Source: Phaeosaccion multiseriatum (taxonomy: Eukaryota; Protista; Ochrophyta, other classes). From it: a DNA stretch of 64,000 nt. A model generated the notes under the pieces. It had not been told where the DNA came from. It saw only the letters and a list, made by a program, of their open reading frames with translations, and made no database searches. Below are positions 12,884-44,572 of this stretch, piece after piece. The position numbers and the translations under genes are program-made. Position 1 is the first letter of the stretch. Each line of letters opens with the position of its first letter. Location of the stretch: assembly GCA_965112735.1 (NCBI GenBank), contig OZ218961.1:1922001-1986000 (forward strand), read 5' to 3'.

Positions 12884-13631
12884 ATGGGAGAGTGTGTGCT
12901 CGACTGCAAAGATGAAGTGGTAGCAACATGGGGCGGAGGACATGGCATGCGGCATGGCTTGTGTGTCCAGGGGCTGTGTACTGGCTGCGGTGGAGGTGCG
13001 GAAAACACCAATTTCTACGGGGCTTCGGGGTGCGTTAACAGGAGATACACCCTCACAGTAATGAGCCTACTGCTCTTTGTGCAGGGCGCGCATTTGGTCC
13101 ACATGCTGTGGGTGGTAGGCATGTGCTATTGGAGGACGAGGAACGGCCCAGACATGGACGTGGCCTCTGCCCCTGCTGGAGCCGCGGCTGCCTCGGCTCG
13201 GCGAGCCAAGAGCTTGAGGTTGAGGCTTGTCGCGGCGGTGATGGCCATTGTCGACTCTCTCGTCACGATTACACTGCCCATTCGCTATCTCAGCTCGGAG
13301 GGGAAACTTGGTAAGGAGGAAGGGGGGATGGGGTGTATCCCTGGACGGGGGTATGTTGGTTGCGTGTTCGCTATCTTTTGCTCAACCCTCGCACCCCCTC
13401 TTCTCTCTGGTATGCTCTCCTCTCCTCCCCAACTGCTCCTCTACCCTACCCTACCCTACCCTACCCTTCTGCCGCTGCTCGCACGTGGACAGACGTGAGG
13501 TGGCTGTGGTGTGCTCTGCTGCTCGTCTCTGGTCTGCGTGTATGGGTGTGCTGGATTGTAAGCAGACTACTCTGGTGAGTGAGTGGAGGAGTGAGTGAGC
13601 GATGGGTCTCTGTCTGTCAGCTTCTTTCACC

Positions 13632-13677
<46 letters not shown>

Positions 13678-15751
13678 CACGCACTCTTTCTCTATTTCGC
13701 CCCAACTTTCTCCCTGAATACGTGAACCGAACCTTTTACCAACCTACCCCCCCCCCCCCCCCTTGCGATGCCCTTCCTTCGCTTTGCCTACTACCCTACC
13801 CTACCCTAACCCCACCCCCGCCCGAACCGAACCGAACCCCCCCCCACCCCACCCACCCAACCCCACCCAACCCAACCCTACCCATCCACTGCCATCCTAT
13901 CCCAATCCGACTCCGACCCCAACCACCAAGGGGCTGTGTGCCAAGCATCTTCCTTGCCCGGAGTCCCAAAGTGCTTGCTGTCAAGAACTGGGTACACTAC
14001 CGACGGAGGCTTCTGTTGGGCTTTTCCCTCACCTTTTGGCTCACCCTCGTTGTGGTCTTGGGTGCCTTGCCTCCCAAGCCCACCCACTTTTGGCTCCTGC
14101 TTCTCCTGTCGCTACCCCTGGCCACTGCTGCTTCCCTGGCCACGGGCGTGGCTTGCGCTTGCCTGGTTCAGATCTTGAACCGAGCCCCTCCACCGCACTC
14201 ACCCTCCGTCAAGAGCTTCAAACGGCTGTGCTTGGTTCTGGGCATTGCTGTAACGGTCTACTCTGTGGGGTCTCTTGTGCTCGTGGTGAGCTTTGTCCTC
14301 ATTGGCCCGACCAGGGACTTGACGGAGAGCCGTCCTCTGGTACAGCAGACTCTCTACCAGGCACTGGTGACGGGTTTCCAAATCCTCGTGTTTAATCAGG
14401 GGTTGAAAGGCGGGCTGCTGCGGCAAGGCATGGGGAGCTCGGGAAGCAGCGCCGGTGGCGGCAGTAGGGTGGGAGCGGCAACGAGAAGCAGCATCGACAG
14501 CAGCACCAGGCCCAGCGACCCTCACAACCCTCGCAGCAGCCGCAGCCGCCGCAGGTGGGAGAGCGGTGGGAGGTGCGGTGTGGTAAAGAGGTGTGCAACA
14601 AGGTGTTTTACCAACTTGTGGTGTTGTGGCTTGCTACTCCGTAAGCAGCAGCGCATCAAGGCGCACGAAGACTTTTCGGCGTCGGGCAACACTCAGAGTG
14701 AAAGCCGCGGCGGCGTCGTCGTGCTTGGCAACCACCACAACAACACCAACACGAACACCAACAACATCATCAACATGCTCAACAGCAACACCAGCAATAG
14801 GGTGTGCGTCGAGGGTCTTGAGATGGCAACCAACGGTGGTGGTGGTGGTGGTGGTGGTCGTGGTCGTGGTGGTGGGGCAGGGGGTGCAGGTGGGGGTGGA
14901 GGACGCTTCGACGACATTGTTGCTGGGGACATTGTCGACGGCTTTTATGTTGGCGACGTCGCGGATAACAATTCCAACAGCTCCACCGCCTCCTCCATGG
15001 CCACTGTGGAGCGTCTATCCTCGGCGTCTTGTTCGGGAGCGTCGATTGCCTCCATCAGTATTGGGGGACTCTCTTCAGCGGCAGCGTCACTCAACGACAA
15101 CTATGAGGTATTTTGTGGGGTATATGCTTACGGTCCGTCCTTGTCCTTGTCGTCCCCCTCTTCCCGCATGCCTCTTTGGAATCCCCCACCCATATGCCTC
15201 TAATGTATCCGTGCCCCATACACCCTCTCCCTTCTGCCTCTTACTGAATCCCCTCCCCATCATCACAGGAGGCGAACTCCCCCTTTGGTCTTCTCATGCA
15301 AGAGTCAGATCGACTGATGAAGGAGTCGAGGGAGTGGGGAGCGGGGGAGGAAGAGGAATCAGGGGAAGGGGAGAGGGACGGAGGGGAGGGGAGGCAAGGG
15401 GGCTGGAAGCTGCATGACGGACGATGGGTGCGGGGCGGGGGCTTGGGGGAATGGGAAAGTGAGGAGTGGAATGACTACTGGGGAGGCACTTCAGGGTCCG
15501 AGTTGGTGATACGGCAGCAACAGGAGAGGCAAGAGAGGCAGCAGGAGATGTTGCAAGAGAGGGAGGAGAGGAAGCAGAAGCAGGAGAAGGAGGAGGCGAG
15601 GGAGGAGAGAGGGGAGGGGGAGAAAGAGGAGGACGGCTCACCGATGGCGACTATGGATGCTGCCTTCGGAAGGCTGTCCAGCGCTAGCAGCACCGCTTGG
15701 AACGCCTTGCTTGGGCTGGGGCGGACGGAGATGTCGTCACCGAAGGAGTGA
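12884..15751 (+). CDS. Cys-rich (EGF-like) N-terminus + 7-transmembrane protein, paralogue A
   Basis: N-terminus MGECVLDC...GLCVQGLCTGCGGG..NFYGASGCV, then seven hydrophobic segments across exons ~12884-13310, 13493-13574, 13931-15107 and 15269-15751. It aligns by eye with the gene at 42892-44572. Confidence 0.75.
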
Positions 15752-16956
15752 AGGAGAGAGGGAGGGGGTGAGTGGGAAAGTGTTTGAGTGAGAACGTGAT
15801 TTCCTTGAAGGAGGGAGTGAACTCACACGAAACGAGTCACTCTCACTAAGAACGACTCACTCAGAAAGTGAAACGTAAGTGAGTGATTTTAATTTAAGTT
15901 AGTGGTGTTATTGAGTTAGTGAGCGAGAGTGAGTAATAAAATAAGTGAGGGAGTGAGCAAGTCAGCTCACTCAAACCACCTCACTCACTCACAATTTGCG
16001 AATAACCGGTGAATCATATTTTGAGCTGACCAACACCAACACCAAAGCTGCTTTTGCTCAAATCATCTCTCGACTGACCCTCACCGAGGGCAGAGACGTT
16101 TGTGCGATACCTTCTTCTAAAAGGCGGACAGTAGTATCACATCAAGGGGAGAAACCGTACTCCTCGATACTCCTCGATTCTGTACATGTAGAGCGTCCAC
16201 TTCAAGTTTCAAGTTTCAAGTAATCAGCCCTTGTCGCCCCCCTGGGGGGAACGTCGCTTCTACGCTCACCGCCGTGCAAGCGCACGGTGGGGCAGTTCGG
16301 AGACTGCTGTACTCTCCACGTGCGAGATGGTGCCCCCGACGAGCTATGCTGAGCTATGGACGCTGAGGTACGACATCATGTAACCGTCCAAGAGTGGAAT
16401 GAAATGAATCCATTGTTCAAATGTGCGCATATTTGTTTACTTGAAAGCAATCCATGGTCATGGATGCGCGAGACGTGCTTCCCTCGTGAGGGCTTGTCCT
16501 CGAGAAGGGCTTCCTTGGAAAAGGAGAAGACAGCCATCAAGCTCACAAATAACACAAAATCAAATCAAAAACACATACATACATACGCACACGCCTGTCG
16601 GATATCTGGGTCGGCGTCTCTCTCTTCCTGCCCCCTGTACCTCGTCAACAAAAAAAAGTGTGATGCCCTCCCTCCCCCCCCCCTCTCCCCCTAACTAACC
16701 GTCGTTGAGCTGCTGCGATCATGAATGAAAAGAAAAAAAAGAACGAAAAAGGCTCCTACCAACTACTACTCACACCCACACCCTCCACCCCTCAAGCTCT
16801 CCATCCACGCTTCCCCCTCCACTCGTGCCAAGCCTGCATTCAAGCCTCCACACATCACATCCGCCTCATCCTCCTCGCTCTCGGCCTCGTGCCTCCAGGC
16901 TATAGTCCTCCCACTCCTCCTTCCCAGCCTCCTCCATCGGTGGTCGCCTCTTGTCC

Positions 16957-19900
16957 TCAATCCTCCTCCTCGTCCTCCTCGTCACTCTCCGCCTCAGCCT
17001 CCGTGAGCCACTTGGTGAAGGGCTGTGCCTTCGCCTGCAGCTCGGCCACAGCCTCTTCGGACACCAAGGGAGGCGTGTACGTGTCGTTCTTGCCCTCCTA
17101 AAGGTCATAAAACGTTACGAAAATGGGATCAAAACAAAACATGGCAAGGTAAGGCATGGCAATTTAAAGTGAACGCCCTTCTTCTGCTCATCGGTTTTTT
17201 TGGTTTGGTTTGGTTTGGTGTGATTGGGTTGGTGTGTTTCGTGGTTGGGGTGGGTGGAAAGGCTGTCAGAACCACAGAGATGATATCTCACAGCGCCTCT
17301 AGGACGCTCATAAAAGTTTAGAAAAGTTAAGTTGTTTTTCCTCATCGCCTTTCTCACACACCACAACCTGAGTCAACCATTCCTCCTCCCTCCCCCTTTC
17401 TTCATCCCTCCCTCCCTCACCACCCCACCCACCCACCTTGGCCCACTCCAGCACGTGCTCCTCCTCCACCACATCGTGGTCATAAAGGAACTTGAGGGCC
17501 ACCGGAAAGAAGGGGGCGAGTTGAGGACGACGCACCGCACACAGCAGTTCAAACCCCCCAATCACATGGCGAGGACTGGCCACCTTGCGGAGCTCTTTGA
17601 AGACAGCCACCTGGTGGTGGTGGTGGTGGAGGAGGAGGAGGGGGGGGAGAGCGGTGTACAGAGGGAGGGGAGGGGGGCACAGAGAGAGGTACAGTGTCGT
17701 TAGATTTTGTAACGGGCACACAGCACAGGTGTGTATCACCAGACAGCAAAGAGCCAGCAGGGACTCTGGACTGACTGGGCTACCCTCTCCCTCCTCTTCT
17801 TCCATCACTTCGCTCATTCCTTCTCTTGCAACATGAATGCTACACCAACCAATCAACCAACCAACCATCCACCCACCCACGCAAGCACGAACCTTGTCCT
17901 GGATGTCCTTCTCAGTGATGGAGGTGGCCTGCTCGAAAGCGGCACTCACGTAGAGATGCACGCGGAACGGCACCGGGAAGGCACTAAACGTCTGCGCCGT
18001 ATTGCACTCGTCGGCAATCACAGCGGCAGGCGCACCGTCCTCACAGTGTCTGGCGATGGAACGCACGCAGTCGTTGAAGGCCGTCATCTCCCCTCCATCC
18101 CCGTCCCCATCGTCAATGTCGAGGTCATCGACGGCGGCGCTCAGACCTCCAAAGTCGTCACCCGAGTCGTCCTCGCCATTTGAGTCTCCGCTCAGCTTGG
18201 AGTCGTCCTCCAGGGCTTTATTTTTATTATTTTTTTTAATTTTGGATTTGGTGGGGTTTTTTTGTTTGTTTGTGCAGGAAGCAGAAAGGCAAGGGGAGAT
18301 AAGACAGACGCAAGACGCAGAAAAGCAAGGAGAGCGTTAGGACCAGGGGTTTGGCGCATGTGTATGTGTGTGGACAGTGTTTGTATACTGTATGGACAAC
18401 ACGGTCATGGCATGACTTCCTCCTCCTTCTCTCACCCACCCCTTCCCCCCTCCAATCACTGACTCACAATCAGCCTCCCCGTTGGTCTTGTCCTTGTCCT
18501 TCTTGTCCTTCTTGCTCTCCTTGTGGCTCCCGTCCTTATCCTTGTCTTTCTTATCCTTCTTCTTGTCTTTCTTGTCTTTCTTGCCTGGGGGGTTCCGTAG
18601 TAAGGGAGAGACAGACAGCGAGAGAAGAGCCGAGAGCAGGTCAGTAAGTGACACACACGGACATGTGAAGCGGAGTGGAACATAAACAGCTGGCGCGGAG
18701 GCCTCCGTGTCCAATTAATTCCCCAACAGAAGACCTGCATCTTCTTACTCAATTCCCTCCCTCTCCTCATCCTCCTTTGCCACCACCTCCTCTCGCCTCT
18801 CTTCCTCCTCTTCCCTCCCTCCCCATCCTCCCAACGGACGGACCTTCCTTTTTGTCCTTCTTGCTCTCCTTATCCTTGTCCTTCTTGCTCTTTTTGTTCT
18901 GTGCGAGGATAAAGGTGGTCAGCTTGTGGCCCATATCCACGAGCTCCTTGGCACCGCACGCCAAGCACTTGTGGTAGATGAGGCCTTCCTTGCTCTTGAT
19001 GGAGTATTTGGACTCGGGCAGACGGCACTCAGGGCACAGCACGAACAGCTCGATGTACTGTTGTTTGATTGTGGTTTTTGTGTTTGGGTTGGTTGGGAGG
19101 GTTCGTTGACGGGTTGTAGAGTTGGGGTCGGGCCGAGACGATGGGGGGGGGGGGGGAGTGAGGGAGTGAGGGAGTGAGGGAGAAGGGGGGGGTGACGGGA
19201 AGAAAGGGAGGGAGAGGGAAGGGCCGAAAGGGGGGAGAGGGAGGAGGACAGAAGGGGAGGAGAGGAGTTGTCAGATATTTTCCATTGAGGGGGGGGGAGA
19301 GATGATTGCCAAGGATGCACCAAAACTTCTGCACCACACTGCTGTACTGCTGCTGATCGGTTGGTTGGTGAGTTTCTTGGTTGGGGTGGGTGGAAAGGCT
19401 GTCAGAACCACAGAGATGATATCTCACAGCGCCTCTAGGACGCTCATAAAAGTTTAGAAAAGTTTTAAGTTGTTTTTCCTCATCGCCTTTCTCACACACC
19501 ACAACCACGAACACAGATCAAATCACAATGAGGTCCACCAAATCATCCCTACCTACTGTCTACTGTGCGCTCTCTCTTCGCCTATCCCTCTTTTCTCTCT
19601 TCTCCTTCGTATTTCTCTACCTGCCTCTCTCTCCTTTCCCCTCTCCCCTTCACCTCCCCCCCCCCTGCCTTCTCCCCATATGCCTCCATATTCCTCACCT
19701 TGTGGACGAGATCCTGCAGTGTCTTGTCGGTGTGCGCTCCGTTGACGATGAAACGGTCAGTGTCGTACCCGAGGATCGTCTGCGCACCAAGCTCGCATCT
19801 GATCATGGGGTAGGTAGGTAGGTAGGTCGGAAGGAAGGTGGGGAGGTGGGGAGGAAGAGGGGGAGGTGGGAGGGCATGGGACGGCGATGGTGAGGTGCGA

Positions 19901-20507
19901 TGATAGGTGCGTGTGTGAGAGTGCGTGTGGGTGTGTGAGTACTGTGTGTGCGAGGGAAGGGGGGAGCAGCAGTACGGAAGGAGAGGGAGAGAGGGCAGCG
20001 GGGTAAAAGCCCTTCTCACAAAAGCAGCAAGCAAGCCAGGCAACTCTCTTTCCCTCTTTCGCCCCCCCTCCCTCACTGACCCGAAGAACTTGGTGATCTC
20101 CCCCGCGTCTCTGTTAAGAGCAAGGGCGAGGTCAGAGACGTTGAAGGCGCAGGTCTTGATGCCGTTGCCGCGCCCCTCCACCTTGCCGATGATGCGGGGC
20201 ATTTTGTACCTGGGGGGTGAGGAAGGGAGGGAGGGGCGAGGAGAGCTTGGGGTTAGTGAGAGATGCGGGGGGGGGGGGGGTTGGAAGGTGTTTGTTTCCA
20301 TGGGTCTTGCGGTGCCTCCCCCGAGGAGGTTCCTGATATCTAAAATAAATTTAGTATGATTCTCCCCCGCTTCCTCACTCAGTCAGTCAGTTCTTCCCTC
20401 CCTTTCTCGAAACACGTCTACGCCCCGCTCCGCACACAGCCTCACCCTCACCTGTACTCAGGGTCATCCACAGGCTCCAGCCCCGCTATGTTAATGTTCC
20501 CAGACAT
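16957..20507 (-). CDS. EIF5: Eukaryotic translation initiation factor 5; multi-exon
   Basis: [19 protein letters not shown]|[19 protein letters not shown]...KFFG|CELGAQT...FIVNGAH, zinc finger [11 protein letters not shown]...CLACG, and W2 domain [18 protein letters not shown]...[21 protein letters not shown] at 16959-16957. Confidence 0.97.
17243..17368 (-). ncRNA. Candidate intronic box C/D snoRNA, copy 1 (last eIF5 intron)
   Basis: Sense to the host gene. Terminal stem GAAAGGC/GCCUUUC, C-like box GCGAUGA, D box CUGA, and the element AUCUCUGUGGU immediately before D. Near-identical to 19379-19506. Confidence 0.65.
19379..19506 (-). ncRNA. Candidate intronic box C/D snoRNA, copy 2 (eIF5 intron)
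   Basis: Second ~125-nt copy in a different eIF5 intron. It differs mainly by a 2-nt indel, and the flanks are unrelated. Confidence 0.65.
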
Positions 20508-20764
20508 GGCACAACCGAGTGTGAGCTTTGCGCGGGAGGCCTCGGGAAGAGGTTATTGCTGTTGCTGTTGCTGTTGCTGCCGCTTCTGCTGGTGCCGGCG
20601 CCGCGCCGATACGGTCTACTACCTCTGGTGGTGGGACGACTGGTGTTATTGCCAGCAGAGCTCTGTGCCCTTACTGAAGCGGAACATTCAGTGCCGCACA
20701 GCGTTATGGTGGGAGCGGAGTGAGATAGAGGTGGCCGAGGGGTCTTTGGGGGCGAAACGTTCAT
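20486..20764 (-). promoter_or_regulatory. Weak-context uORFs in the putative eIF5 5' leader
   Basis: uAUG at 20764 (tgtATGa) opens an out-of-frame ORF ending at 20486, which overlaps the eIF5 AUG (gccATG, 20507). uAUG at 20687 (tgaATGt) encodes MFRFSKGTELCWQ*. The TSS is unknown. Confidence 0.55.
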
Positions 20765-21282
20765 ACACAACGTCGTTGTTGCGGTCTCAGCAGCAAGCTC
20801 TGGGTAATATGCCCTCCGCAGATGAATTCACAAGTTTCCCTTCTCCCTTCGCCTCTCCTCCGCCGTAAGTCCGCTGATCTTCGCTACCCGCGTCCCGCAA
20901 AAGTCCTTTGATCCCTTTTTGTCTCCTCTTCTTCCTCCTTTCCCGTGTAGAGCCTTGTATGTGTTGAATCGGTCTGGGGCCAAGCACCTCAGGCAAGGTC
21001 ACCCAGGGGGGCGTTCTGGCTGAGAACCTGAAACTAAAATTCTCCAATTTCCACTCCCCCCCTTCTTCCGTTGACTCGCCCACTTGTTGGGGGAGAAGAG
21101 AGGGCATGGGGAAGAGGAAAAGGTGGGAGGTTGCTTTGGTGGCCGACCAAAACTGGCTCTGACTCATCGACCTTTCCGAGAGCCTCCCACTGTCGTAGCA
21201 ACAAGAGGGAGCCGTTTTGGTAAATCTCTCCCTTTTTCCCTTGAATCTCTTTACTTGCATCTTTTGCGCGTAGTGGGTAAAG

Positions 21283-26565: not shown

Positions 26566-26689
26566 TGGAGTCATATGGAGCACTCGGAAGGCAATGAAGG
26601 CCCTGATGGACCACCGCTGGACATAGATGGACGAGCGTCGAGCGTCATAACGTCATAACCCTTGTGCGAGAATCTGATTGATGGAGTCG

Positions 26690-29351: not shown

Positions 29352-29383
<32 letters not shown>

Positions 29384-32406: not shown

Positions 32407-32494
32407 ACTGGCTGCGGTGGTGGAGGGGGGAGGGGGGCAAGGGGGTTACTCGCACAGTTCAAGGCTTCAGAGGGGGGGGGCGAGGGGGCGGGAC

Positions 32495-33360: not shown

Positions 33361-34399
33361 CTCGGAGCAGCAGCCCGGATCTCACACGGTGCAGGCCCTC
33401 AAACACGGAGCCCTCTACAGGGCACAGCCCGTGGGTGCGTACAAGACGCATCGCACAGTCCCAACGCGGAGGGTATGCCCTGGTCAGTGGGTGTGCAGAC
33501 ACGCTCTGCACACGATAGGGGGTTGCGTTGGCCTCTCGTCGATGACAGTCTGCCTCCCGATAGACGCGGAGGAGACGGTCGGGGTAGGCTTCGATTGAAA
33601 GGCCTGTCACCGGTGGACTGGTCTCCTCCCCACTCACAACACTCTCGCTCATTGGTAAATGTGCAGCGTCCGCAGAGCATCATGCTTGTGGATCGCAAAA
33701 AAGAAGCATGGCTAGGCTACCCGGGCCTCCAACGACCGCCGTCCTCCTTAGCTCCTTCAAGTTCGTCCTCCAGCTCAGCCGCGCGACCTCAGGATTGGGA
33801 TCGTCCAGCGCAGAGACGTTCCGAGGCCCCCAACCAGACGATGCGCTCACCTCCACAGGAGCCTTCAGCATCTGAAAGTCCCCCCACAAAACCCTCGCTC
33901 GCTTTGCATACATCCTCATCCCAGGGTCCCTGGGATGAGAGAAGGCGGTCACGGCGGCTGATCGGCATGGACGACATCAACAAGTGCGAGGCGTTTCATC
34001 AATGCGGGAGGCTCCCTAACGAGCAGCGGCGCTGAACCCCTCCCCCGTAAGCTCATAGCCGTGCTTCTCGGCCCAGTACACACGCTCTATGGAGGCCACT
34101 ACATTACCACGGGCTTCTCTCTCATTCTCTCAGGGGCCCTATCTCTCCTCTTCCAGAATGGGAGCGTGGGCACAACTTGGTGGGCAGGGCGGCGGTCGCG
34201 ATCGCCAAGCCAGCTCCAACAGTTGGCGTATCCGGATTCTATGACGCCTACTTCTTCCACGCCTTCATTTCTCCTGATTTTTTCTTTCAGCCTCCACCCC
34301 TACCCCTTGGGTGAAGGTAGGGTGTAGGAGGAGTAGTGGGGAAGGGGCTGGTCCATCGAGTATTTGGTAGTAGAGCGGGATTTCTCTTCATCAGTCGAG

Positions 34400-37300
34400 A
34401 TGTGCGTGGGCCCCAAAAAAATCCCTAGGGAGAGCGATGCAGGCGTCCTGCTTGGGCTCGGGGTTGGGATTTCCACGACATTCACTCTCCTGGGGATCTT
34501 TTTCGCCATCCCTGTGTCCATTATTTACGGTCTCTACGCGGCGCCTCTCTCCACGGCCCTTGTCGTGACGCTTTACTACTTTTTCTGCATGGACGGGGCA
34601 GAACGGAACGGAGAGGGTCGACCGTGGCCATACTTCTCACAGGTATGTTGTTCCTCCCTCACCCAGTAACCCCCATCCAGGTACCAGGTCTCCTCGCTCA
34701 CCCGGCTCTCGGTCATGTATCCTCCCCCTCTCGCCTCAGAACTTTCCTCTCACGGCGGCCGGCCGGAAGTACTTCAATTTCACAATGACTGTCCACCCGA
34801 AACTGCGAGAGAGTCGCGACCAGCATATCATCGCGATACACCCTCACGGAGTCATGTCCGACTTTCGGTTGCAGCTCGACGGCGTCGTTCACAACTACCT
34901 ACCCAACGTAAGTCACTGAAGGAGTGAGCAACTGAGTGAAGTGACTGAGATGTGGAAGTGAAGCTTGTTCGTCACTTCGTTAGCACATACAACTCGGCAT
35001 CTCTCCCCGCTCTCTCACACAACTGTGTGAACTCCCCCCTCTCCTCTGCGCCGTATTTTCCTCCCCCGCTGTCCATTCCGTGTGCGTGTATCCCTCCCGT
35101 GCGTGCAGCTCAAGTCATGGCGTGCCCTTGCGGCAAGTGTGCTGTTCAAGTTGCCAGTGATGCGTGAGATGGCCTTGTGGACACACTGCATAGACGCAAG
35201 CAGGACTACCGCAGAGCGAGCACTTGCCAAGGGCCACAGCCTGTTCATAGTGGTGCGTTGCTGAGCCTTGGGAGGGAGAGAAGGAAGGAGGGAGGGAGGG
35301 AGGGACGGACGGAAGGAAGGAGGGAGGAAGGGAGGGAGGGAGGGAGGAAAGGAGGAAGGAAGGGAGGGAGGGGCGGGGAGAGAGGGAGAGGGAGGGAGGG
35401 GAGAGGGAGTGGGAGGGAGGCAAAAAGAGGGAGAGGGAGCGGAGAGGGAGAGGTAGAGGGACGTATGGAGGAAGTCCGTATACCCTCACACCTATTGATT
35501 TTGCCTTTACAATCGAACGGGAGCTGTTGTGCCTCCCGACTGCTTGATTGATGCACCAATGGCACTAACTGAAGGACTAAATGGATGCACCAATGGCACA
35601 GAGTGAAGAACTAACTGAAAGGTGCCCTCTCTATTGATTGATTGATTGATTGATTGACCATTATACCCTCCCAGGTGGGTGGGGAGAGGGAGCAGATTTT
35701 GGGCTCGTTCGGCACTGAGGTAGTGTATGTGAAAAAGCGCCTTGGCTTCATCAGACTAGCCCTGAGCAACGGCGTGTCAGTCGTACCCAGGTGAGTGAGT
35801 GAGTGAGTGAGTGAGTGAGAGAGGGAGAGTGAGTGAGTGAGTGAGTGAGTGAGTGAGTGAGTGTGCATTAGCTAAAGGGTACTGCTGTTAGTCTTACGGG
35901 GCGGAAGGGACGCACACACGCAGCGAAGGCGAGACACACACACACACACGTACATACACACACAGAAGGAAAAAAACCACACACACAATCACATTCGCGG
36001 TCGTGCTTGCTTGTTGTGTGTCATCTCCACTCAGGCAGATAGACAGACAGGCTTTCTGCAGTGAGGATCAAAATAGCTCTTCACGTCTCTCAACTCCCTC
36101 CCCCCTCCTTTTACGTGAACACTTATCAATGCCCATATGCGTTGTGTGGGGCTGGTGTGGCACTCACTACCCTGCCCTGCCCATACACCTCTATCCTGCC
36201 CTATCCATGCACCTCTACCCTGCCCTGCCCATACACCTCTACACTACCCTGCACGTACACCTCATACACCTTAACCCTACCCTGCTCTACCCTGCCCATG
36301 TACCTCTACTCTATCCTGCCCTGCCCATACTCCTCTTCACCCATGCACTTCTACCCTACCCTTGCCCTGTTATACACCTCCGTCCACCCACATCCATCGA
36401 CCTCTGGCATTCTCAACAGCTACTGCTTCGGGGTTACTGATGCCTATCGGACATCACGCTTTCTCCACGACTTTCGCTACTGGCTCGTCTGCAAAGCACA
36501 GGCAAGCAACTATGCAGGCACAAATTTCAGTTTTATTTGGTTTAGCAGTTGAAATTTCGGTTCAGATCGGAGATAATCAATCGACGCACAATATCGAACG
36601 TATCGATACACTCCAGAGGTCACACGAACGCTTCCGAAACCTCCAAGGAACTAGCGCTTGATCCCACGCACAAGTGGCGCCTGACCTGAGCCTGAACCCC
36701 CCCCCCTCCCCTTCGATTGCTCGTTTCGGTCGCGTATTGGTGGTACACGTGTGGTGTTCACAGGTGGCTATTCCCATCTTCTGGGGGAGGTGGGGTTTGC
36801 CCTGCCCCTATCCGGTACGTGGGGGGGTGTCAGGACGAGGGTGGGAGGTGTCAGGACGAGGGTGGGAGGTGTCAGGACGAGGGTGGGAGGTGTCAGGACG
36901 AGGCAGAGGAGAGGAAAGGAGGGGAGGAGAGAGCAGGGACTCGTCCACGCCTTGTCCTCCTTGTGCTCCTCGGGGCGTGTGCACATTGCGCATATATACA
37001 CTACGACGTGTGCACATTTCGCGTATCTATATATTACTTCGTAGTATACATACGGTCATATGGAACATGACCATGCGCGGAGGGGGAGCGAGGGAGGCGG
37101 ACGATTGCTCTAGGTCCAAGACGGGTCGGTCTCTCTCTCAATCGTCTCTGTATATCTCAGCCCTTCTTCTCTTTCATGTATCTCTCTCGCTCTCTGCCTC
37201 CCACACACTCACATTTTCGTCTCCCTCTCTCTATTCATCTCCCTCATACGCTACTCTCCGCTTCCCTCCCTCTTCAGCTCCTCCTCTCTCTCTGTCTCCC

Positions 37301-37723
37301 TCTCTTATTCTGTCTCTCTGTCTCTCTGTCTCCCTCTCTCTTATCCTCTCTCTCCCTCTTCTCTTCTGTCTCACTGTATCTCTGTCTCCCTCTCTCCTTA
37401 TGTATAATCATGTAAACAAATACGTGTATCTCTCTCCCTCCACTCCTCCTCTCTCCTTCCCACTGCTCCCCCCGCAGGTGAGAACAAGTATGGTACTGGG
37501 CGAACCTCTCGTCTTCAGCACGCCCAAGCACAAGCAAGCAGACATCAGCAGCAGCAAGGGTGGCAGCAAGGGCGGCACCAACGGATCTGGCGGGTCCAGA
37601 TGGCAACCGACGGAGGAGGAGGTGACGAAAGCGCATCAACAGTTTGTGGATGCGCTGACCAAGCTGTTTGACGAACACAAGGAGAGGTTCGGTTACGGAG
37701 AGCGAGAGTTAGTCATTTGCTGA
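34400..37723 (+). CDS. DGAT2/MGAT-family (DAGAT) acyltransferase; 7 exons
   Basis: N-terminal TM region, [24 protein letters not shown]|[37 protein letters not shown], and [27 protein letters not shown]. Intron 36502-36763 has a GC donor. Confidence 0.93.
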
Positions 37724-38232
37724 CTAGCTTAACTCTTTTTTTTTTGTGTGACTTTCCTACTCCCCTTTTTTGTGAGTGACTAAACTTGATTGAGCGAGTG
37801 TGGGTGTCAAGGCATAAGTGAACAGCGTGCCACAACAACAGACTTGAGAGCAGGAGAGCATGAGGAAGGGGGGAAGGGACGGCCACGTCACGCCTCTCTA
37901 TCCATTAATTAAAATTTTATAGCATGGCAAGCTCGCTCCCCTCCTTCCTTCAAGGAAAGGTTTTTAGCTTGGGTCACTCACTCTGTCAGCTTGGGTCACC
38001 ACTCACTCTGTCAGTCAGTCTGTCTCGGTCTCCAGCCCCAACACCCTCCTCTGCCTTCACAGGCAAACGCCTTCACAGCAATACCCGCAGCATTCCGCAG
38101 TACTAGCGCTTAGCTTTTAGCGCTTAATTTTTCTTTCGGATGACGTACCCTACTTGACACACTTCACGTCCTCCCCGGGGGGCGATGGGGTTCTCGTGTC
38201 AAAGATGGCAGCACATATGGCGACAGTTACTC

Positions 38233-40555
38233 TCACGCCGCCGCTGCTTGCAGGGCTCCTCCCTTCGCCCCCCGGATCCCCCCTGCTGCTGCCACACCGA
38301 CCTTCCCCTCGTCCCCCTCCTCTTCCTCGTCCTCCTCCTCGTCCTCCTCCTCCTCCAGGTCCTTCTTGTCCAACCCAATGCGATCGTCCCCTGTTTTGAA
38401 GAAGGTGTAGCTAAGGGTAATGTTGGTGACATTGTTCATGGCAGGGTCGCTGAGCATTTCGGGGTCCAGGAAGAAGAATACGGGCATATCTATCTCCTCC
38501 CCCGATCGAAGGCGCTGCTCCTCGAAGCAAAAGCACTGAATCTTGTTGAAGTAGATACCCGCCTTTGTGTGTGTGTGTGTGTGTGTGGTAGGGTGGTAGG
38601 GGGGGGGAGGGCAGATACAGAGAGCACGCTTTGGTTTGACTTCAAGCTTCACCACTTCCAGTTGAATAGGATATGATTCTCCCCTACTCGCGAGGACTAC
38701 ACCATCGCATCGAGAGAGCAAGATCACAACCATCCAGAGTCGAACATCCGAACAGACCAGACTAGCACCAGAGTATCAATGAATCAGTGGCTGACGAAGG
38801 AATCAGTGACTGGCGAATGAATCAGTGACTGCCGAAGTATACGCAAGCGCCAACCTTGAGGGGAAAGACGTTGTATGTGGCCACGCCGGTGATGTTCTTG
38901 TCGGAGGGGTTGCGAGCCGTAAAGAAGGCTAGGGCTGTCTCTCCAGGGAGAACCTTTGGGCACCGTATAGGGCGGGCGGGGGGGGGGGGGATGGCAACCG
39001 ATGGCAGCGATAGGATGTGGTGACGATGGGTGATGTGAGGTCGTAGCCAGCAGTAAAAAAACACCAATGGTATTACAGCAAGGCAGCAGTTGGAGAATCA
39101 GAGCAGCAGCAAGGAGGGAAGGAGTAGAAGGAGTAAAAACGAGCAGCAGGAGGGAACCGGCGGCCCCCTGAGAGGTGGGTATACATCGACAAGTGTGAGC
39201 CTTGCGCTTGTCCCGCAGAGAGGTCTGCCCATTCGCCTGCCCATACGCCTGCGCTACCGCTCCAGTTTGCAGTGCCAGTTTGCCTGCCTGCCCGTATGCC
39301 CGCCTGCCTTCCACCCCCTACCCCTGAGGCCGCCATTCCCTTCTGCATTCGCTCTCTCGCTGACGCACCCACGCACTCACGCACTCACCCACTCAACCAA
39401 ACTCACTCACTCATTCACACACTCACTGTCTCACTCATTGACTCACTCATTGACTCACTCACTCACTCACTCCTTCCTTCCTTGCCCTACTTACCTTGAC
39501 GTCTCTCTGTGTGGGATAGAACTTCCACGGCATTGTATCCGCGCAGCCTCCGTCAAAGACGACTCGGATCAGACGCGCCCCCTCCACAGGCTTCACCAAG
39601 GCGGCCTGGTCAGCGTCTGCCACTTGAGTAGTACCGCCGAAGCCCGTAGCCTTTGCAGTACCGGGGTAGAGGGGAAGAGTGGAGCGGGGGATGTGGGGGG
39701 GTTGAAGAGCTAAGGGAGAGCGAGGGAGGCAGGCGGGGGTACAAGACCTCTCTCTCTCTCTAAACGGTCTACAAGCTGGCAGGGGTGGGAACGGGGCCAC
39801 AGCTCAAAGGAGAAAAGAGAAAGGAGGAGGGAGGGCCAATTCTGCCGCATAGATCGAGTTACATCCACCCTTTCCCTCTCTCTCTTTCTCTCCTCTAGTT
39901 GCCTGAATTGCTTTCCCGGTCCTTCGCTCTCCTTCCCTTTCCCTTCGTTGGTTTCGACAATTTACCTCCCTGGCCATCGTACCTGGCAAAATACTTTGTA
40001 GAGTGGCACAGCGGCGTAGCTCAGGCCCAGGAAGGCGATTACTGCCGAGATTAGATACATTCCCATCCTTTCGCTTCGCTCATCCACCGTTTCCCCACCA
40101 CCACCATCGCCTCTGCCTCGCCCTCCTTGTTCCGCCCCAGCACTGTCCCCCTTGGTGCCGTGCTGCCTAGCTGCCGCTCTCCCCGAGGAAATACTCCTGG
40201 AAGCGATGGAGTGGACTGCCGCCATCTCCACGCGCGCTCCGTGTCGCAGATGCGAGGAGCAGAGGTGGAGGTGGGCAGCCTGTCGCAATAGCTGCTGCTC
40301 ATCCACCCCTCCTCGCCTCTGCGGGGGCGGGACGTTGGAGCCAGTGCTCCCGCCTCGCGTCCACAGAGACCTACATCCCGCCCCCCACTTGTTACTACTG
40401 CTGCTCGCTAAGCTCCTTCGGACACCTTTGTTCGCCAAGCCTTCCCTCCGGCCGACCGTCTCTGGTGCTGCTGCTCCTGCTGCTGCCGAGGAGGACGCAG
40501 CAGCTGCACAACGGGCTACATGATACGTTCGTGAGGACAGCGCTTTCATCATCAT
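38233..40555 (-). CDS. COX11: Cytochrome c oxidase assembly copper chaperone COX11; 4 exons
   Basis: Arg/Ser/Ala-rich mitochondrial presequence, SYAAVPLYKVFCQ|ATGFGGT, MPWKFYPTQ, VLPGETALAFF, GVATYNVFP, YFNKIQCFCFEEQRL and TLSYTFF. Confidence 0.97.
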
Positions 40556-40849
40556 CCTTCTTTGTTGTTATTTTATGTCTCTCTATCTCCTATAACAAGG
40601 CTGAGAAATTGGAATTGGAAAATCTTTCTCAATGTTTGGTTTCGGGTTCGGCACGGCAGGGGGTTGGGCCTCGATTCCTCCATTCAAACCGATTCAATCG
40701 AATTCAAGTGCTCCGTTTGGAATTAAATTGGCGGGGCTACATTGTAGTGAGGTCGAGGACACGGCCTTCGTCTTTGGCCCAGACGGACCAGGCAGCAGGT
40801 CAGCTCACCCTTCCTTCCTCCCTTAAATGCATATTTCTGATCGACCCTG

Positions 40850-41350
40850 TGACGCACGCACTCACGAAGTACGCATACTCGGGCACCTCAGTCTCTCTGT
40901 GGAGCGGCCGACAGCTGGGGCGAGAGCGGGCTCCAGTAGACCGGTCTATGGCCGAGCCTATGGTAGGAAACACTCTGCGAAGCAGCAGCAGTCACGCACG
41001 CACTCGCACTCCCTGACATCAAACAACCCCCCTCACACGCACGCCCTCACGCACGTAATCATTCATGTCCTCCCTCACGCACTCACACATGTGGAGCGGA
41101 GCGGATCGACCGCCGGGAGCAGAGCGTGCCCCAGTAGGTCGGTTTCGGGTCTACTCTTTGGGGGAGGACACCGCCCCCCCCTCTTACGAACTTACGAACG
41201 AGCCGTCACGTACGCACCCACTCCCTGACCTACGTCTCCCTCAATCACTCACTCAAATGTGTGTCGAGCGGAGCTGGTCGACCGCCAGGGCCAGAGCATC
41301 CCACAGTAGATCGGTTTGGGGCCGAATCGTTGGAGGGAGACACCTTGCCC
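40850..41350. repeat. Three degenerate ~170-190-bp tandem units
   Basis: The shared block tgt(g/c)gagcgg...cgac(a/c)gc...gagc...cagtag..cggt recurs at ~40898, ~41090 and ~41262. Confidence 0.7.
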
Positions 41351-42028
41351 TCCTCGATCCTCGAAGTCCCCCCCCCCTGTCCCCATGTGAGCAAGCTCCG
41401 GCCCCCCAACACAATAAACAATCTAATGTAATTATTTTAAATTAACAAATGTAAAGTATAGTAAGGTTGCCTGTTATACATAATAGCAGGCAAACATGTA
41501 AATGACTAAGCACCTAAGATGTGGTAAGGATGTGCAAGCCGCCTGCCCGCGGACCTCTCGATCACGCGGGACGAGGCCTAGCTGACCAAAACCCCCCAAC
41601 TTGGGGGTGGAGGGGCGGGGAGAGACAAGTCATGCCTTCCGCCAAGAGCCGAATCCCCGCTGCTGATGCTCCCTCTGCTTGCCTCAGGTGGGGAAACTGC
41701 AGTGCCACTTTTAAAGGTAGCCTCGTGCCCTCCCTTGACCCAGCAAGTTCATTCTCTCCCTCTCCACCGCCACCTCCCTTTACGCTCTCTCCCTATATAG
41801 ATATATATGTATACTCCTCCTCCTCTCTCTCGTTCTCTCTCTGCAGTTGTGTGGCGCTCCCACAACCCGAGCACGGCTCCACTCACTTGTTGGCTCCTCC
41901 CACCTCCAACACGGAGTGCAGAATTGATTAATATGACAACATGCGCCTTGTGCGTCCCTTCCAGTGCCTCCAGCGAAGCACTGCAGCCCCTCCCCCCCCG
42001 TAGTCCGTCCGACAAAAGCCCCGGCAAT

Positions 42029-42472
42029 CTACTCCAGCGGAGAGTCCTCTCCCTCCGGTATTACAGGCAGAGACGGTCTTCGAAATTCGGGTATTCCGTA
42101 CTCGACAGGCCCGCTGTGAGCCGGAGCACGCATGGAGGACTCCTCCGCCTTCCCGTCCGAGAACATCCTGTCGATAAGCATCATGGCGTCCTCATTTGGT
42201 CGCTGTGGAGAGTTCTGCGGTGGCGGTACGCGATAGCCTTGATGTTCTCGGTGTTGTTGTTGCTGCTGCTGCTGATACTGCTGATGGTGTTGATGACGCC
42301 CACGCTTCGGCTTCCTCAGGTTCCAAAAGATCATAACGAGGCTCGACACTGCACATAACGTGGCCAACAGAGGCTCTGGCATGTCCAGTCCTGCTTGCAA
42401 CCTACCTGCCCAACTTGATGCCCTGTCCAAACTGCCTTTGAAAGAAGCACTTGGGAAATTTTCGTGACGCAC
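42029..42472 (-). CDS. Possible small membrane-protein exon, unknown function
   Basis: Non-repetitive ORF with one hydrophobic stretch (LLATLCAVSSLVMIFW) and a Q/H-rich run. No recognisable motif; start and exon structure unresolved. Confidence 0.25.
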   Translation of the reverse strand: MRHENFPSASFKGSLDRASSWAGRLQAGLDMPEPLLATLCAVSSLVMIFWNLRKPKRGRHQHHQQYQQQQQQQHREHQGYRVPPPQNSPQRPNEDAMMLIDRMFSDGKAEESSMRAPAHSGPVEYGIPEFRRPSLPVIPEGEDSPLE

Positions 42473-42891
42473 GGGTTCACAGCCTGCTGCACCGTTGCAG
42501 CTCCTTCCTCCTCTTCCTTTCCGACCCAGTCGTGGTGATGGAGGCGTTAAGGTTGATGTTTGTAGTGCGTTATCAAAGGCTGATTTGTAGTAGCAGGGGG
42601 GCGGGCGTGAGCGACGCGCGCTAAGGGGTCACAGATGGCGTCAGGATTCAAATGCGAATACAATTGTAGATCCGACAATTTTTGGGAACGGTGGGGGGGG
42701 GTTTCATCCACTTTATTCGTGCTAGGTGCAGACAGCAGCTCCTAGCGAAGGGCAACACCTATGGCAGCCTCTATGGCTCGCTCTTGGACCACGGGTCCAG
42801 TCCTCGGGTCCAGTCCGGGCCAGCCTAGAAGAGGAGGAGAGAGGAAGAAGGAAAAAGAGGAGGAGGGGAGGAGAGGGGAGAAGTATCTTTC

Positions 42892-44572
42892 ATGGCGTCC
42901 AGCAGCTGCATCCTCCACTGCCAAGAGGAGCTCTCTCAAACCTTCCCCTTTTCGTCTGACAAGTCAGAGGGGCAGTGTCAGGAGGGCAAGTGTGTTGGAT
43001 GCGGCGAGGGCCTCAGGTGCGTGGACACCCGTAGTCCCTGCTCTTCAATTTATAATTTTGTTTGACGATGAACGTAAAGGCATTTCCCACCCCTCTCATC
43101 GCCCTCCCCCCTCTTCATTACCCTCTTGCGCGCTTCAGCGACTTGAACACTTTCGGCAATGCCGCCTGCGTTTGGAGGGCGTTTACTATGTAGATTTAAC
43201 ACCTCTTTCCCGCCCCTTTGCACCTCGCGCGCGCGCGTGCCTCCCTTCCTCTCTCCCCCTCTTGCCTCTTGCTCGATTCAGTGACTTGAACATTTACGGC
43301 TGTGCCGCCTGCGTTTCGAGGGCGTACAATGCCGGTTTGATGTGGGCCTTACTCGCCATGGAAGCACTCCTCCTTGCTCAAATCGCCTGGGCGCTCTTCC
43401 GCTTCGGACGCCGGACAGACCAGGGCAAGGGCTCCATTGGAGTGAAGCTGAGGCTCGTTGGTATTCTGTTCGTCTTCCTTGGCGTTCTTGGCACCGTCAC
43501 TCTGCCCGTTCTACACCTGACGCGGGGTCGGCACCTGGATTCCCCTTTCATGTGGGGGTCTCTCTTGTCGACCTGCCTCTTGGGAAACTGCAGTGCCTGG
43601 CTGGTCGCAAGACTTTGGATGGATGTTCTTCCAAGTGCCTTGATGCACAAGAGCCCGGAGGTATTGAAGCTGCGAACCTTCATGCACCAACATCTGCATC
43701 TCATCTTACTGTTCGTCGGTTTGCACGGGATTGGCCTGGAATACTTCCTGCTGCACGGCTCCAACGCAAGCCCCGAGCGCTTTTGGCTCGGAATGATCGC
43801 CTGCATCCCCAATGTCAGTATCGTGTGCGTCCTCATCCTGGTCGCCAGCTCTCATCTCCTCAAGGTGCTCCGGGGAATGGGCCAGCTGTCCCCAATTATG
43901 GTCAAAGTCAAGAGGGAGTGCGCCGGCATTCGGGTGGTGACTGCAGTGCTCCTTGTGTGCCCCCCTGTGTTCATATTTTTGTGCAATGTCGAGCCCATGC
44001 GCGCTTGGTTGCTCCAGCGGGCCTTGCTCTCCTACAGCGTCTACATTGCGAACTGCCTCTTCTTTCAGTTCGGCGCCTTTTTCTTTGTGTTCCGCGGAGG
44101 GGTCACGGGGCCGCCCAAAGTGCATCCCGAGAACTCACACTCAAACAAACACTTCGTATCGAAGCCTAGCAGCTTCCACGGTCCTAACTCGCGACCAAAA
44201 GCAGGGGATCATCAACATCTACTCTCGGACGGCCCCCCGCGTACCTCAGCGCAAACAGGACAGCTGCAACAGCAACAGCAACCGCAGCAACAGCAGCAGC
44301 AGCAAAAGCAGCAGCAGCAGCAACAGGGGCAGCCGCAGCCGCAGCCGCAGCAGGAGCAGGAGCAGCAGGAGCAGGAGAAGCTGTTCCTATCGATACCCCC
44401 ATCGTCGCGTGGAGTAGACGTGCTGTCTTTTAGGTCCCTTGCGGAGTCTGAGGTGACTTATCAGGACCCTTGGGGGGCAAGGCATGAAGAACGAGGTGCG
44501 ATTGAGCCCAAGTCAGCGGGGCACACGCGGAGTGGTGGTGCACGCAAAGAGGCACACGTGTCGCCAGTGTGA
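42892..44572 (+). CDS. Cys-rich (EGF-like) N-terminus + 7-transmembrane protein, paralogue B
   Basis: Exon 1 (42892-43016) reads MASSSCILHCQEE...GQCQEGKCVGCGEGLS and is missed by the ORF track. Intron 43017-43281. Exon 2 reads DLNIYGCAACV, then seven hydrophobic segments and a poly-Q tail. Confidence 0.8.

What the first reader, a model, noticed from the sequence alone, without database searches (positions are those of the whole stretch)
12884..44572. Two paralogous EGF-like/7TM receptor-like genes of a family I do not recognise
Seen: once spliced, the genes at 12884-15751 and 42892-44572 share a collinear design. Each has a signal-less six-Cys N-terminus (C-x3-C...G-x-C-x2-G-x-C-x-G-C...YG-x3-CV), followed by seven hydrophobic helices and a long low-complexity, Ser-rich tail. 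Matching anchors are LRLV..., VTITLPI/TVTLPV, LW..LL/MW.SLL, WIVSRL/WLVARL, VPSIFLARSPKVL/LPSALMHKSPEVL, FWL, LVQIL...SP..K/LLKVL...SP...K and terminal KGG/RGG. Their intron positions differ and the sequences are well diverged, so the duplication is old. Established: an extracellular Cys module on a 7TM with a phosphorylatable tail is GPCR-like architecture. Inference: a lineage-specific algal receptor family. I see no DRY/NPxxY motif or retinal-binding Lys that would place it in a known class.
Basis: partly seen in the sequence, partly recalled or inferred. Interest (0 to 1): 0.78.

Follow-up and report, generated by a model that had tools for sequence, protein, structure and literature searches.

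The report
Orphan algal GPCR-fold receptor family
The two genes are real, anciently diverged members of an unnamed family of at least 22 seven-helix membrane proteins in this alga, each with a small cysteine-knotted cap; they fold like animal G-protein-coupled receptors, have relatives so far only in a yellow-green and a brown alga, and what they sense or signal to is unknown.

Summary
Observation confirmed. Both genes splice with canonical GT-AG sites into collinear proteins: a signal-less six-Cys N-terminal module, seven helices and a low-complexity tail. The exons match each other (E 8e-8 and 9e-6, about 25% identity).

A and B are not a local pair. They are two deep, unresolved branches of a family with at least 22 intact copies in this genome. 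Eighteen are compact, intronless and in tandem arrays. The scan already noted one such array on other DNA (s1-345960).

AlphaFold2 models (pLDDT 86-88, pTM 0.83-0.84) match only GPCRs among solved structures. All top 50 hits have Z 14.9-18.7, 219-263 residues aligned and 6-14% identity. No class motif (DRY, NPxxY, retinal Lys) and no Pfam 7TM model fits.

A profile search of 1.84 billion representative proteins found three relatives: two in Tribonema minus, one in Undaria pinnatifida.

In the compact clade the Cys module (dN/dS 0.15) and the cytoplasmic face (0.30-0.35) are conserved. The outer halves of TM3, 5, 6 and 7 vary freely (0.63-1.06). That is a chemoreceptor-like pattern.

The genome has at least six G-alpha loci. 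Coupling, ligand, location and expression are untested.

Verdict: a new, lineage-restricted family of a known kind. Interest is moderate.

The parts
12884..13310 (+). Gene A exon 1. Starts at the Met and encodes the six-Cys N-terminal module, TM1, the first cytoplasmic loop and TM2. The donor is G|GTAAGG in phase 1.
   Evidence: ORF and sequence. Family profile hit E 5.5e-22 over profile positions 1-134. BLASTP to B exon 2 gives E 8e-8, and to L021 gives E 1.6e-17.
13493..13574 (+). Gene A exon 2. Encodes the end of outer loop 1 (the conserved Asp, then Trp five residues on) and TM3, ending in the W-I-V-S-R-L-L-W motif.
   Evidence: Acceptor gacAG|AC and donor CTG|GTGAGT restore the frame and the family's invariant D..W and L-W positions. 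On its own the exon is too short for significance (E 0.45).
13931..15203 (+). Gene A exon 3. Encodes the conserved cytoplasmic loop 2 (VPSIFLARSPKVL), TM4 to TM7, and a 260-residue Gly/Ser/Asn-rich tail up to the stop at 15201-15203. Any further exon up to 15751 is unverified.
   Evidence: Family profile hit E 7.3e-19 over positions 163-323. BLASTP to B gives E 9e-6, and to the compact paralogues gives E 4e-14. Tail composition.
42892..43016 (+). Gene B exon 1. Starts at the Met and encodes the first five Cys of the N-terminal module. The donor is CAG|GTGCGT in phase 2.
   Evidence: Sequence. Family profile hit E 1.4e-5. BLASTP to L021 gives E 2.4e-11 at 47% identity.
43091..43182 (+). A diverged duplicate of B's intron end, acceptor and first 45 nt of exon 2, lying inside B's intron. 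If it were used as an acceptor, the reading frame would hit a stop after 18 codons.
   Evidence: Local alignment at about 85% identity to 43239-43325. Sequence. Function unknown.
43282..44572 (+). Gene B exon 2. Encodes the last Cys of the module, all seven helices in one open frame (to about 44110), and a 153-residue Gln-rich tail.
   Evidence: Family profile hit E 1.8e-92. AlphaFold2 gives pLDDT 88.0, pTM 0.84 and seven long helices. Fold matches are to GPCRs only.

Best explanation
Genes A and B encode two old, intron-bearing members of an unnamed 7TM family with the GPCR fold. The family is restricted, as far as the databases show, to ochrophyte algae (this genome, Tribonema, Undaria).

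Shown here: each protein starts directly with an acidic, roughly 55-residue six-Cys module, predicted as a short helix plus two beta hairpins and loosely EGF-like. Seven helices arranged as in solved GPCRs follow. There is a short extra helix in the TM6-TM7 loop carrying a conserved [DE]-P-x3-W-x3-R-P motif. The cytoplasmic face is strongly conserved (TM3 end L-W, loop 2 A-L-P-x-x-L-x-x-x-P, loop 3).

Inferred: the Cys module and the outer loops face outward as a constant disulfide-bonded cap. A ligand binds in the cavity formed by the outer halves of TM3, 5, 6 and 7, which is the part that diversifies among the tandem copies. The conserved inner face passes the signal to one shared partner, most plausibly one of the alga's heterotrimeric G proteins. 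The long low-complexity tails of A and B would serve regulation or scaffolding.

I therefore read the family as a chemoreceptor-type repertoire, with A and B as its diverged single-copy members.
For: - Paralogy and family. There are 22 intact copies plus 4 broken ones.
- The genes are real coding genes: open frames are kept in all copies. Overall dN/dS is about 0.5, and 0.15 in the Cys module at dS 0.59.
- Fold: AF2 pLDDT 88.0 and pTM 0.84 for B exon 2, and 86.4 and 0.83 for L002. By VIA-align the top 50 of 48,161 chains are all GPCR folds (solved GPCRs of several classes plus two de novo designed GPCR-like folds), with Z 15.8-18.7 and 14.9-17.1, rmsd mostly 3.5-5 Å and 219-263 residues aligned. 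Foldseek's top hits are all GPCRs, with TM-scores mostly 0.5-0.6.
- N-out topology: positive-inside counts.
- Chemoreceptor-like pattern: entropy and dN/dS by region give an inner face of 0.30-0.35 against outer TM3 0.63, TM5 0.78, TM6 1.06 and TM7 0.84. The copies sit in tandem arrays with pseudogenes.
- Possible transducers: at least 6 G-alpha loci in the genome. Stramenopiles are known to hold most GPCR-pathway parts (PMC3971589), and Ectocarpus has six G-alpha genes (PMC3879662).
- Other GPCR classes are scarce here: no 7tm_1 hit, no Dicty_CAR hit and about four 7tm_3 genes.
Against: - There is no transcript evidence, no ligand, no localisation and no evidence of G-protein coupling.
- The GPCR fold is also used by proteins that are not surface receptors (THH1/TOM1, GPR137, the GOST group). 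The language-model Atlas puts B nearest to THH1/TOM1 and PRRT3 clusters, at 0.90-0.91.
- The models rest on only 21 sequences, and AlphaFold2 may lean towards the GPCR arrangement for any 7TM protein.
- dN/dS near 1 in the outer helix halves fits relaxed constraint as well as diversifying selection. The pairs are not independent. Lower dS in some conserved parts (0.31-0.38) hints at gene conversion.
- The variable-pocket pattern was measured on the compact clade, not on A and B themselves, which have no close relatives to compare.
- The Arg of the R-L-W motif is not conserved outside this genome (E-L-W in Tribonema and Undaria).
Confidence: 0.6

Rival explanations
1. The family is a distant branch of the THH1/TOM1/TOM3-GPR137-PRRT3 group. 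These are GPCR-fold proteins of endomembranes (tonoplast, lysosome) that act as scaffolds or regulators rather than as ligand-sensing surface receptors.
For: Atlas feature search. For B, 14 hits at 0.9 or more fall in the THH1/TOM1 set (best 0.91, 177 of 256 shared features), with PRRT3 at 0.90 and GPR137_N at 0.89. The same families appear at 0.80-0.83 for L002. A choanoflagellate orphan family (RSF) with an extra TM6-TM7 helix also shows weak structural links to TOM1 (10.1101/2025.04.15.649019).
Against: PF06454 hits none of the 21 family members even at E 10. In the genome it hits four other loci (C3, C10, C11), not this family. hhalign of the family profile against one of those THH1-like ORFs gives probability 0.2%. 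TOM1/GPR137-type genes are usually low-copy and lack a Cys-rich cap. This family shows tandem birth-and-death, a disulfide-type N-terminal module and a variable outer cavity. Atlas scores in this range also occur for unrelated sequences.
Confidence: 0.2
2. The proteins are GPCR-fold 7TM proteins that work without G proteins. They could be adhesion or self-recognition molecules acting through the Cys module, or ligand-gated or transport-type 7TM proteins.
For: No DRY or NPxxY. The most conserved extracellular parts are the Cys module and the TM6-TM7 loop, which could be a protein-binding surface. Arrestin-type domains are barely detectable in the genome.
Against: The module is only about 55 residues and nearly invariant among the copies, so it cannot explain the diversification. 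The strongly conserved cytoplasmic loops 2 and 3 argue for a shared intracellular partner. No channel or transporter fold appears among the top 50 structural matches.
Confidence: 0.12
3. A and/or B are decaying or mis-modelled genes. The long branches, low-complexity tails and the decoy acceptor in B's intron would then be signs of pseudogenisation.
For: End branches of 1.4-1.9 substitutions per site. A has lost two otherwise invariant positions, the Gly in TM2 and the Trp in the TM6-TM7 loop. No transcript data are available. The family does have clearly broken copies elsewhere.
Against: Both keep uninterrupted frames across all seven helices and canonical splice sites that restore the frame and the family register. 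They also keep most invariant residues: all six Cys, D..W, L-W, the two loop-2 Pro, the TM5 Pro and R-P before TM7. B's 7TM exon folds with pLDDT 88.
Confidence: 0.07

Closest known systems
Solved GPCR transmembrane domains (bitter-taste TAS2R14, class C TAS1R/mGlu1/GPRC5D, class A GPR35, CMKLR1, HCAR1)
   Same: Seven helices in the same arrangement, with Z 15-18.7, rmsd about 4 Å and 220-263 residues aligned. N-out topology. A short N-terminus without a signal peptide, as in many class A receptors. Tandem arrays with a variable outer cavity, as in taste and odorant receptor repertoires.
   Different: Identity is 6-14%. No Pfam 7TM model matches. There is no DRY, no NPxxY and no class-specific motif. 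No single class stands out above the others. There is an extra short helix in the TM6-TM7 loop. Coupling is untested.
THH1/TOM1/TOM3 (PF06454), GPR137, PRRT3/4
   Same: GPCR-fold 7TM proteins of similar size. They are the nearest named clusters in language-model feature space, at 0.89-0.91.
   Different: No HMM or profile-profile signal. Those families lack a Cys-rich N-terminal module, are low-copy, and are endomembrane proteins (knowledge from the literature, e.g. PMC10576174 and 10.1101/2025.04.15.649019).
RSF ('Remi-sans-famille') orphan GPCRs of choanoflagellates and other protists (10.1101/2025.04.15.649019)
   Same: [quoted passage not shown] Its distribution across eukaryotes is patchy.
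   Different: The RSF motif NxLQxxMNxL is not present; here the helix carries [DE]-P-x3-W-x3-R-P. RSF proteins have no extra domain, whereas this family has the six-Cys cap. RSF was not reported from stramenopiles in that text.
Cys-rich-module-plus-7TM architectures: EGF-TM7 adhesion GPCRs, Frizzled (CRD-7TM), fungal PTH11 (CFEM-7TM)
   Same: A disulfide-rich extracellular module placed directly in front of a GPCR-fold 7TM domain.
   Different: The module is a single one of about 55 residues, immediately at the N-terminal Met, with no signal peptide. There is no GAIN/GPS domain and no CRD or CFEM pattern. No 7tm_2 match appeared in the Pfam scans of the family members. The architectures are analogous, with no evidence of shared descent.

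Membership tests
GPCR-fold 7TM superfamily | Seven transmembrane helices | tested here: met
   Seven hydropathy peaks in A and B. AF2 DSSP shows seven long helices in B exon 2 and in L002.
GPCR-fold 7TM superfamily | Helix arrangement superposable on solved GPCRs | tested here: met
   By VIA-align the top 50 are all GPCR folds, Z 14.9-18.7, 219-263 residues aligned. Foldseek's top 50 are all GPCRs. These are predicted models, not solved structures.
GPCR-fold 7TM superfamily | N-terminus outside, C-terminus inside | tested here: met
   Positive-inside rule: K+R is 4.6, 5.0, 3.9 and 3.0 on loops 1, 3, 5 and the tail, against 1.3, 0.0 and 2.0 on loops 2, 4 and 6. The N-terminus has 8.3 acidic against 3.7 basic residues. 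This is computational only.
G-protein-coupled receptors in the functional sense | Ligand-dependent activation of a heterotrimeric G protein | not testable with these tools
   I could only show that the genome has at least 6 G-alpha loci.
Class A rhodopsin-like GPCR (PF00001) | 7tm_1 profile match; E/DRY at the TM3 end; NPxxY in TM7 | tested here: not met
   No Pfam hit. TM3 ends in R-L-W or E-L-W, and TM7 ends in F-Y-F-V-F-R-G.
Class B/adhesion, class C, Frizzled, cAMP-receptor GPCRs | Match to the family's 7TM profile (7tm_2, 7tm_3, Frizzled, Dicty_CAR) | tested here: not met
   hmmscan of 21 members at E up to 10 lists none of them. The 7tm_3 hits in the genome lie at other loci.
EGF-like domain | Six Cys with the C-x-C-x2-[GP]-[FYW]-x(4,8)-C signature and a two-hairpin fold | tested here: inconclusive
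   Pfam gives EGF_2 at E 0.0066 in one member and hEGF at E 0.056 in two members of 21. The Tribonema and Undaria proteins have C-x-C-x2-G-[FY]-x10-C, whereas this genome has C-x2-C-x2-G-[FY]-x10-C. AF2 predicts two beta hairpins after a short helix. Disulfide pairing was not checked, and the module was not folded alone.
THH1/TOM1/TOM3 (PF06454) | Match to the PF06454 profile | tested here: not met
   No hit in 21 members. The genome's PF06454 hits lie elsewhere. hhalign against one of them gives probability 0.2%. The Atlas feature similarity of 0.91 is only a lead.
RSF orphan GPCRs | Short extra helix between TM6 and TM7 carrying NxLQxxMNxL; no additional domain | tested here: not met
   The extra helix is present (H284-290 in L002, H241-247 in B), but the motif is different and a Cys module is present.
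Microbial (type I) rhodopsins | Retinal-binding Lys in TM7; rhodopsin-type helix packing | tested here: not met
   There is no conserved Lys in TM7 and no microbial rhodopsin among the top 50 structural matches.

The most novel reading that the evidence does not exclude
The family is the chemoreceptor repertoire of the brown-alga/yellow-green-alga lineage. Its variable, largely hydrophobic transmembrane cavity would bind small lipophilic cues. Members could then include the long-sought receptors for the hydrocarbon gamete pheromones of brown algae (the ectocarpene receptor is still unidentified and has been suspected to be a GPCR; PMC3879662). Signalling would run through the lineage's six-member G-alpha set.
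Probability: 0.07. Interest if true: 0.85.

Novelty: new variant of a known kind. Interest (0 to 1): 0.5.

Why it matters
Surface receptors of photosynthetic stramenopiles are almost unknown, even though these algae have a full G-protein toolkit. This genome shows no class A or cAMP-type receptors and only about four class C genes. This family, with at least 22 copies, a confident GPCR-fold model and a chemoreceptor-like pattern of variation, is so far the largest candidate receptor repertoire I could detect in it.

The family is absent from Pfam and appears in public databases only as three 'hypothetical proteins'. Defining it gives a concrete gene set to test for chemosensing, for example of nutrients, of conspecific cues or of gamete and zoospore attractants.

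It also adds one more independent 'Cys-rich cap plus 7TM' design to the catalogue of eukaryotic GPCR-fold families. The step is modest, because orphan lineage-specific 7TM families are common in protists and function is unproven.

Tried and rejected
- Pfam scans of the exons and of 21 family members found no 7TM family.
- A profile search of PDB sequences found nothing.
- The word-index protein search was blank for L002 and for a THH1-like ORF, and returned only the Undaria protein for the alignment. So I could not build alignments of THH1/TOM1, GPR137 or PRRT3 for a proper profile-profile test.
- hhalign of the family profile against a single THH1-like ORF of this genome gave probability 0.2%.
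- Scans of viral contigs and JGI metagenome contigs with family patterns found no relatives.
- PF27607 is not in the local Pfam copy.
- A tree meant to place A and B left the deep branches unresolved, so I make no claim about sisterhood or order of duplication.
- Viral or retro-element origin of the intronless compact clade was considered but not tested beyond the blank viral scan.
- Zinc-binding cytosolic N-terminus (C-x3-C and C-x2-C) was considered and rejected. It would put the basic loops outside, and the Tribonema and Undaria modules carry the EGF C-x-C-x2-G-[FY] signature.
- Microbial-rhodopsin and insect-OR-like (inverted) readings were rejected on topology, the lack of a TM7 Lys, and the fold matches.
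- The joined (spliced) proteins of A and B were not handed to any search or folding tool. All searches were done exon by exon by reference. A joined translation was made only inside a local script for a hydropathy scan. Full-length fold prediction of A, and of B including exon 1, was therefore left out.

Full report
WHAT IS THERE

The window is part of contig C12 (1,922,001-1,986,000) of a 67-Mb, 22-contig eukaryotic assembly. Earlier notes of this scan call the organism a stramenopile alga. That fits my result that the only outside relatives of the genes come from Tribonema minus and Undaria pinnatifida.

Gene A reads as three exons:
- Exon 1, 12884-13310, donor G|GTAAGG.
- Exon 2, 13493-13574, acceptor gacAG|AC and donor CTG|GTGAGT.
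- Exon 3, from 13931, acceptor ccaAG|G, open to the stop at 15203.

Gene B reads as two exons:
- Exon 1, 42892-43016, donor CAG|GTGCGT.
- Exon 2, 43282-44572, acceptor ttcAG|T.

These junctions restore one frame. They also restore the register of residues that are invariant in the family: the Asp and the Trp five residues later at the start of TM3, and the L-W at its end.

Both proteins begin at the Met with a six-Cys module and no signal peptide. Both have seven hydrophobic segments. Both end in low-complexity tails. A's tail is Gly/Ser/Asn-rich, and B's is Gln-rich rather than Ser-rich.

IS THE SIMILARITY REAL?

Yes. Tested exon by exon, B exon 2 matches A exon 1 at E 8e-8 and A exon 3 at E 9e-6, collinearly, at 25-26% identity.

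More tellingly, a six-frame search of the whole genome with B's 7TM exon found 25 matches. A family profile found the following:
- 18 compact copies. They are intronless, 349-413 residues long, and arranged in tandem arrays on contigs C2, C7, C10 and C11, with single copies on C13 and elsewhere on C10.
- Two single-exon copies on C13 (L021, L022) with a long insert in cytoplasmic loop 3.
- A and B.
- Four broken copies or fragments.

The profile hits A exon 1 at 5.5e-22, A exon 3 at 7.3e-19, B exon 1 at 1.4e-5 and B exon 2 at 1.8e-92. A and B each match other family members better than they match each other. In a maximum-likelihood tree they sit on long, unresolved branches. They are therefore two old lineages of a family of at least 22 members, not a duplicated pair. 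One of the tandem arrays had already been noted by this scan on other DNA (s1-345960). My analysis of variability was made independently and agrees with it.

ARE THEY GENES?

All 22 copies keep open frames. Among the 18 compact copies, dS ranges from 0.03 to 1.2 and overall dN/dS is about 0.5. In the Cys module it is 0.15 at dS 0.59. That means purifying selection on the protein. No transcript evidence was available.

FOLD

AlphaFold2 was run on B's 7TM exon with an alignment of 21 family sequences. It gave mean pLDDT 88.0, pTM 0.84 and seven long helices. A compact copy (L002) gave 86.4 and 0.83. Its N-terminal module was predicted as a short helix followed by two beta hairpins at pLDDT 80-90.

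Foldseek against the PDB returned only GPCRs in the top 50. TM-scores were mostly 0.5-0.6 (range 0.35-0.61), with E from 1e-3. The independent all-against-all VIA-align search of 48,161 representative chains returned only GPCR-fold chains in the top 50 for both models. These were solved receptors such as TAS2R14, TAS1R2/3, GPR35, mGlu1, GPRC5D, CMKLR1 and HCAR1, plus two de novo designed GPCR-like folds. Z ran 15.8-18.7 and 14.9-17.1, rmsd was mostly 3.5-5 Å, 219-263 residues aligned, and identity was 6-14%. These Z values are above the level of about 13 that the tool warns helical bundles can reach by chance, and no other fold intrudes. No GPCR class stands out.

Charge counts follow the positive-inside rule for an N-out, C-in topology.

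WHAT IT IS NOT

- No Pfam 7TM model matches any of 21 members, even at E 10.
- The PDB sequence profile search is blank.
- TM3 ends in R-L-W (E-L-W in Tribonema and Undaria), not DRY.
- TM7 has no NPxxY and no conserved Lys.
- The Cys module is only loosely EGF-like. Pfam EGF models reach E 0.0066-0.056 in three members. The Tribonema and Undaria proteins carry the classic C-x-C-x2-G-[FY] spacing, while this genome has C-x2-C.

DISTRIBUTION

A profile search of every one of 1.84 billion representative proteins found three hits:
- Two Tribonema minus 'hypothetical proteins' (KAG5177583 and KAG5177565), at E 6e-22 and 2e-17.
- One Undaria pinnatifida model from EukProt, at E 5e-6.

The Tribonema loci hold at least three intron-rich copies, and the deposited gene models miss some helices. 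Viral and metagenome contig scans found nothing. The Phaeoexplorer brown-alga genome paper does not mention GPCRs, 7TM or EGF families in its text. The family is thus undescribed and, on present sampling, restricted to ochrophyte algae. Sampling of such algae in the databases is thin, and this genome itself is not in them.

HOW IT LIKELY WORKS

Among the compact copies the pattern is sharp:
- Conserved: the Cys module (dN/dS 0.15); TM3's inner half plus cytoplasmic loop 2 (0.35); TM5 inner half, loop 3 and TM6 inner half (0.30); and the short helix in the TM6-TM7 loop.
- Variable: the outer halves of TM3 (0.63), TM5 (0.78), TM6 (1.06) and TM7 (0.84).

In solved GPCRs, those outer halves line the ligand pocket and the inner face binds the transducer (established knowledge). 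Together with the tandem birth-and-death, this fits a chemoreceptor repertoire with one shared intracellular partner.

The genome has at least six G-alpha loci, as Ectocarpus does (PMC3879662). Stramenopiles hold most parts of the GPCR pathway (PMC3971589). Class A and cAMP-type receptors were not detected, and class C counts about four genes.

What is shown is the fold, the topology prediction, the family and the variability pattern. What is inferred is ligand binding in the cavity, a surface location and G-protein coupling. A dN/dS near 1 does not prove positive selection. The pattern was measured on the compact clade, not on A and B.

RIVALS

The main rival is a distant link to the THH1/TOM1-GPR137-PRRT3 group of endomembrane GPCR-fold proteins. 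The language-model Atlas suggests it at 0.89-0.91 for B. The direct tests I could run were negative. However, I could not assemble proper alignments of those families, so it stays open at about 0.2.

[quoted passage not shown] Its motif and domain make-up differ.

Pseudogene or artefact readings are unlikely for the reasons given under 'Are they genes?'.

LIMITS

The spliced proteins of A and B were never handed to search or folding tools. Work was done exon by exon by reference, and only a local hydropathy script joined them. A was therefore not folded at all, and B was folded without its first exon.

VERDICT

The genes belong to a new, lineage-restricted family of a known kind (GPCR-fold receptors with a Cys-rich cap). 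The same family was already met by this scan elsewhere in the genome. Interest is moderate (0.5). It would rise sharply if the family proved to be the chemoreceptor or pheromone-receptor set of this algal lineage.

Noticed in passing
window 43091-43182 (compare 43239-43325): Inside gene B's only intron lies a diverged copy (about 85% identity) of the intron's own polypyrimidine tract, acceptor and the first 45 nt of exon 2. Spliced there, the message would read 18 codons and stop. It could be a decoy acceptor or a remnant of a small tandem duplication.
   Followed up: partly
G000 C10:2.349-2.367 Mb, C11:0.694-0.705 Mb, C7:2.447-2.451 Mb, C2:1.713 and 1.727 Mb (L002-L019): The 18 compact family copies have no introns and sit in tandem arrays. 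A, B and the Tribonema copies have introns at unrelated positions. The compact clade may descend from a processed (retro-copied) gene that was then amplified.
   Followed up: no
L020 (G000:C5:3802498-3803467); G000:C10:2356880-2357882; C10:2367475-2367747; C11:2958892-2959095: These are broken family copies. One is frameshifted near the start of TM4, one is split over three frames, and two are short fragments. They are signs of gene birth and death.
   Followed up: partly
C-terminal tails of L002-L019, L020, L021: A short K-V-[LF]-P motif is conserved a few residues from the C-terminus of otherwise variable tails. It may be a sorting or docking signal. It is not evident in A or B.
   Followed up: no
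L009:2502-3845; L006:1-1269 (minus strand): Next to one array copy lies a very long open frame made of a perfect (SLTH)n microsatellite. Next to another lies a 423-residue unidentified ORF with an acidic, low-complexity start (possibly from a mobile element; not checked).
   Followed up: no
L027 and L028 (Tribonema minus JAFCMP010000524.1): The deposited Tribonema gene models KAG5177583 and KAG5177565 omit some helices, for which matching exons exist in the DNA. L028 holds a second, unannotated tandem copy (about 14629-16478).
   Followed up: partly
window 12720-12760 and 44560-44700: (CA)n/(TG)n microsatellites flank both genes, in A's 5' region and just after B's stop. They create the spurious Cys-Val repeat ORFs seen in the six-frame list.
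   Followed up: no
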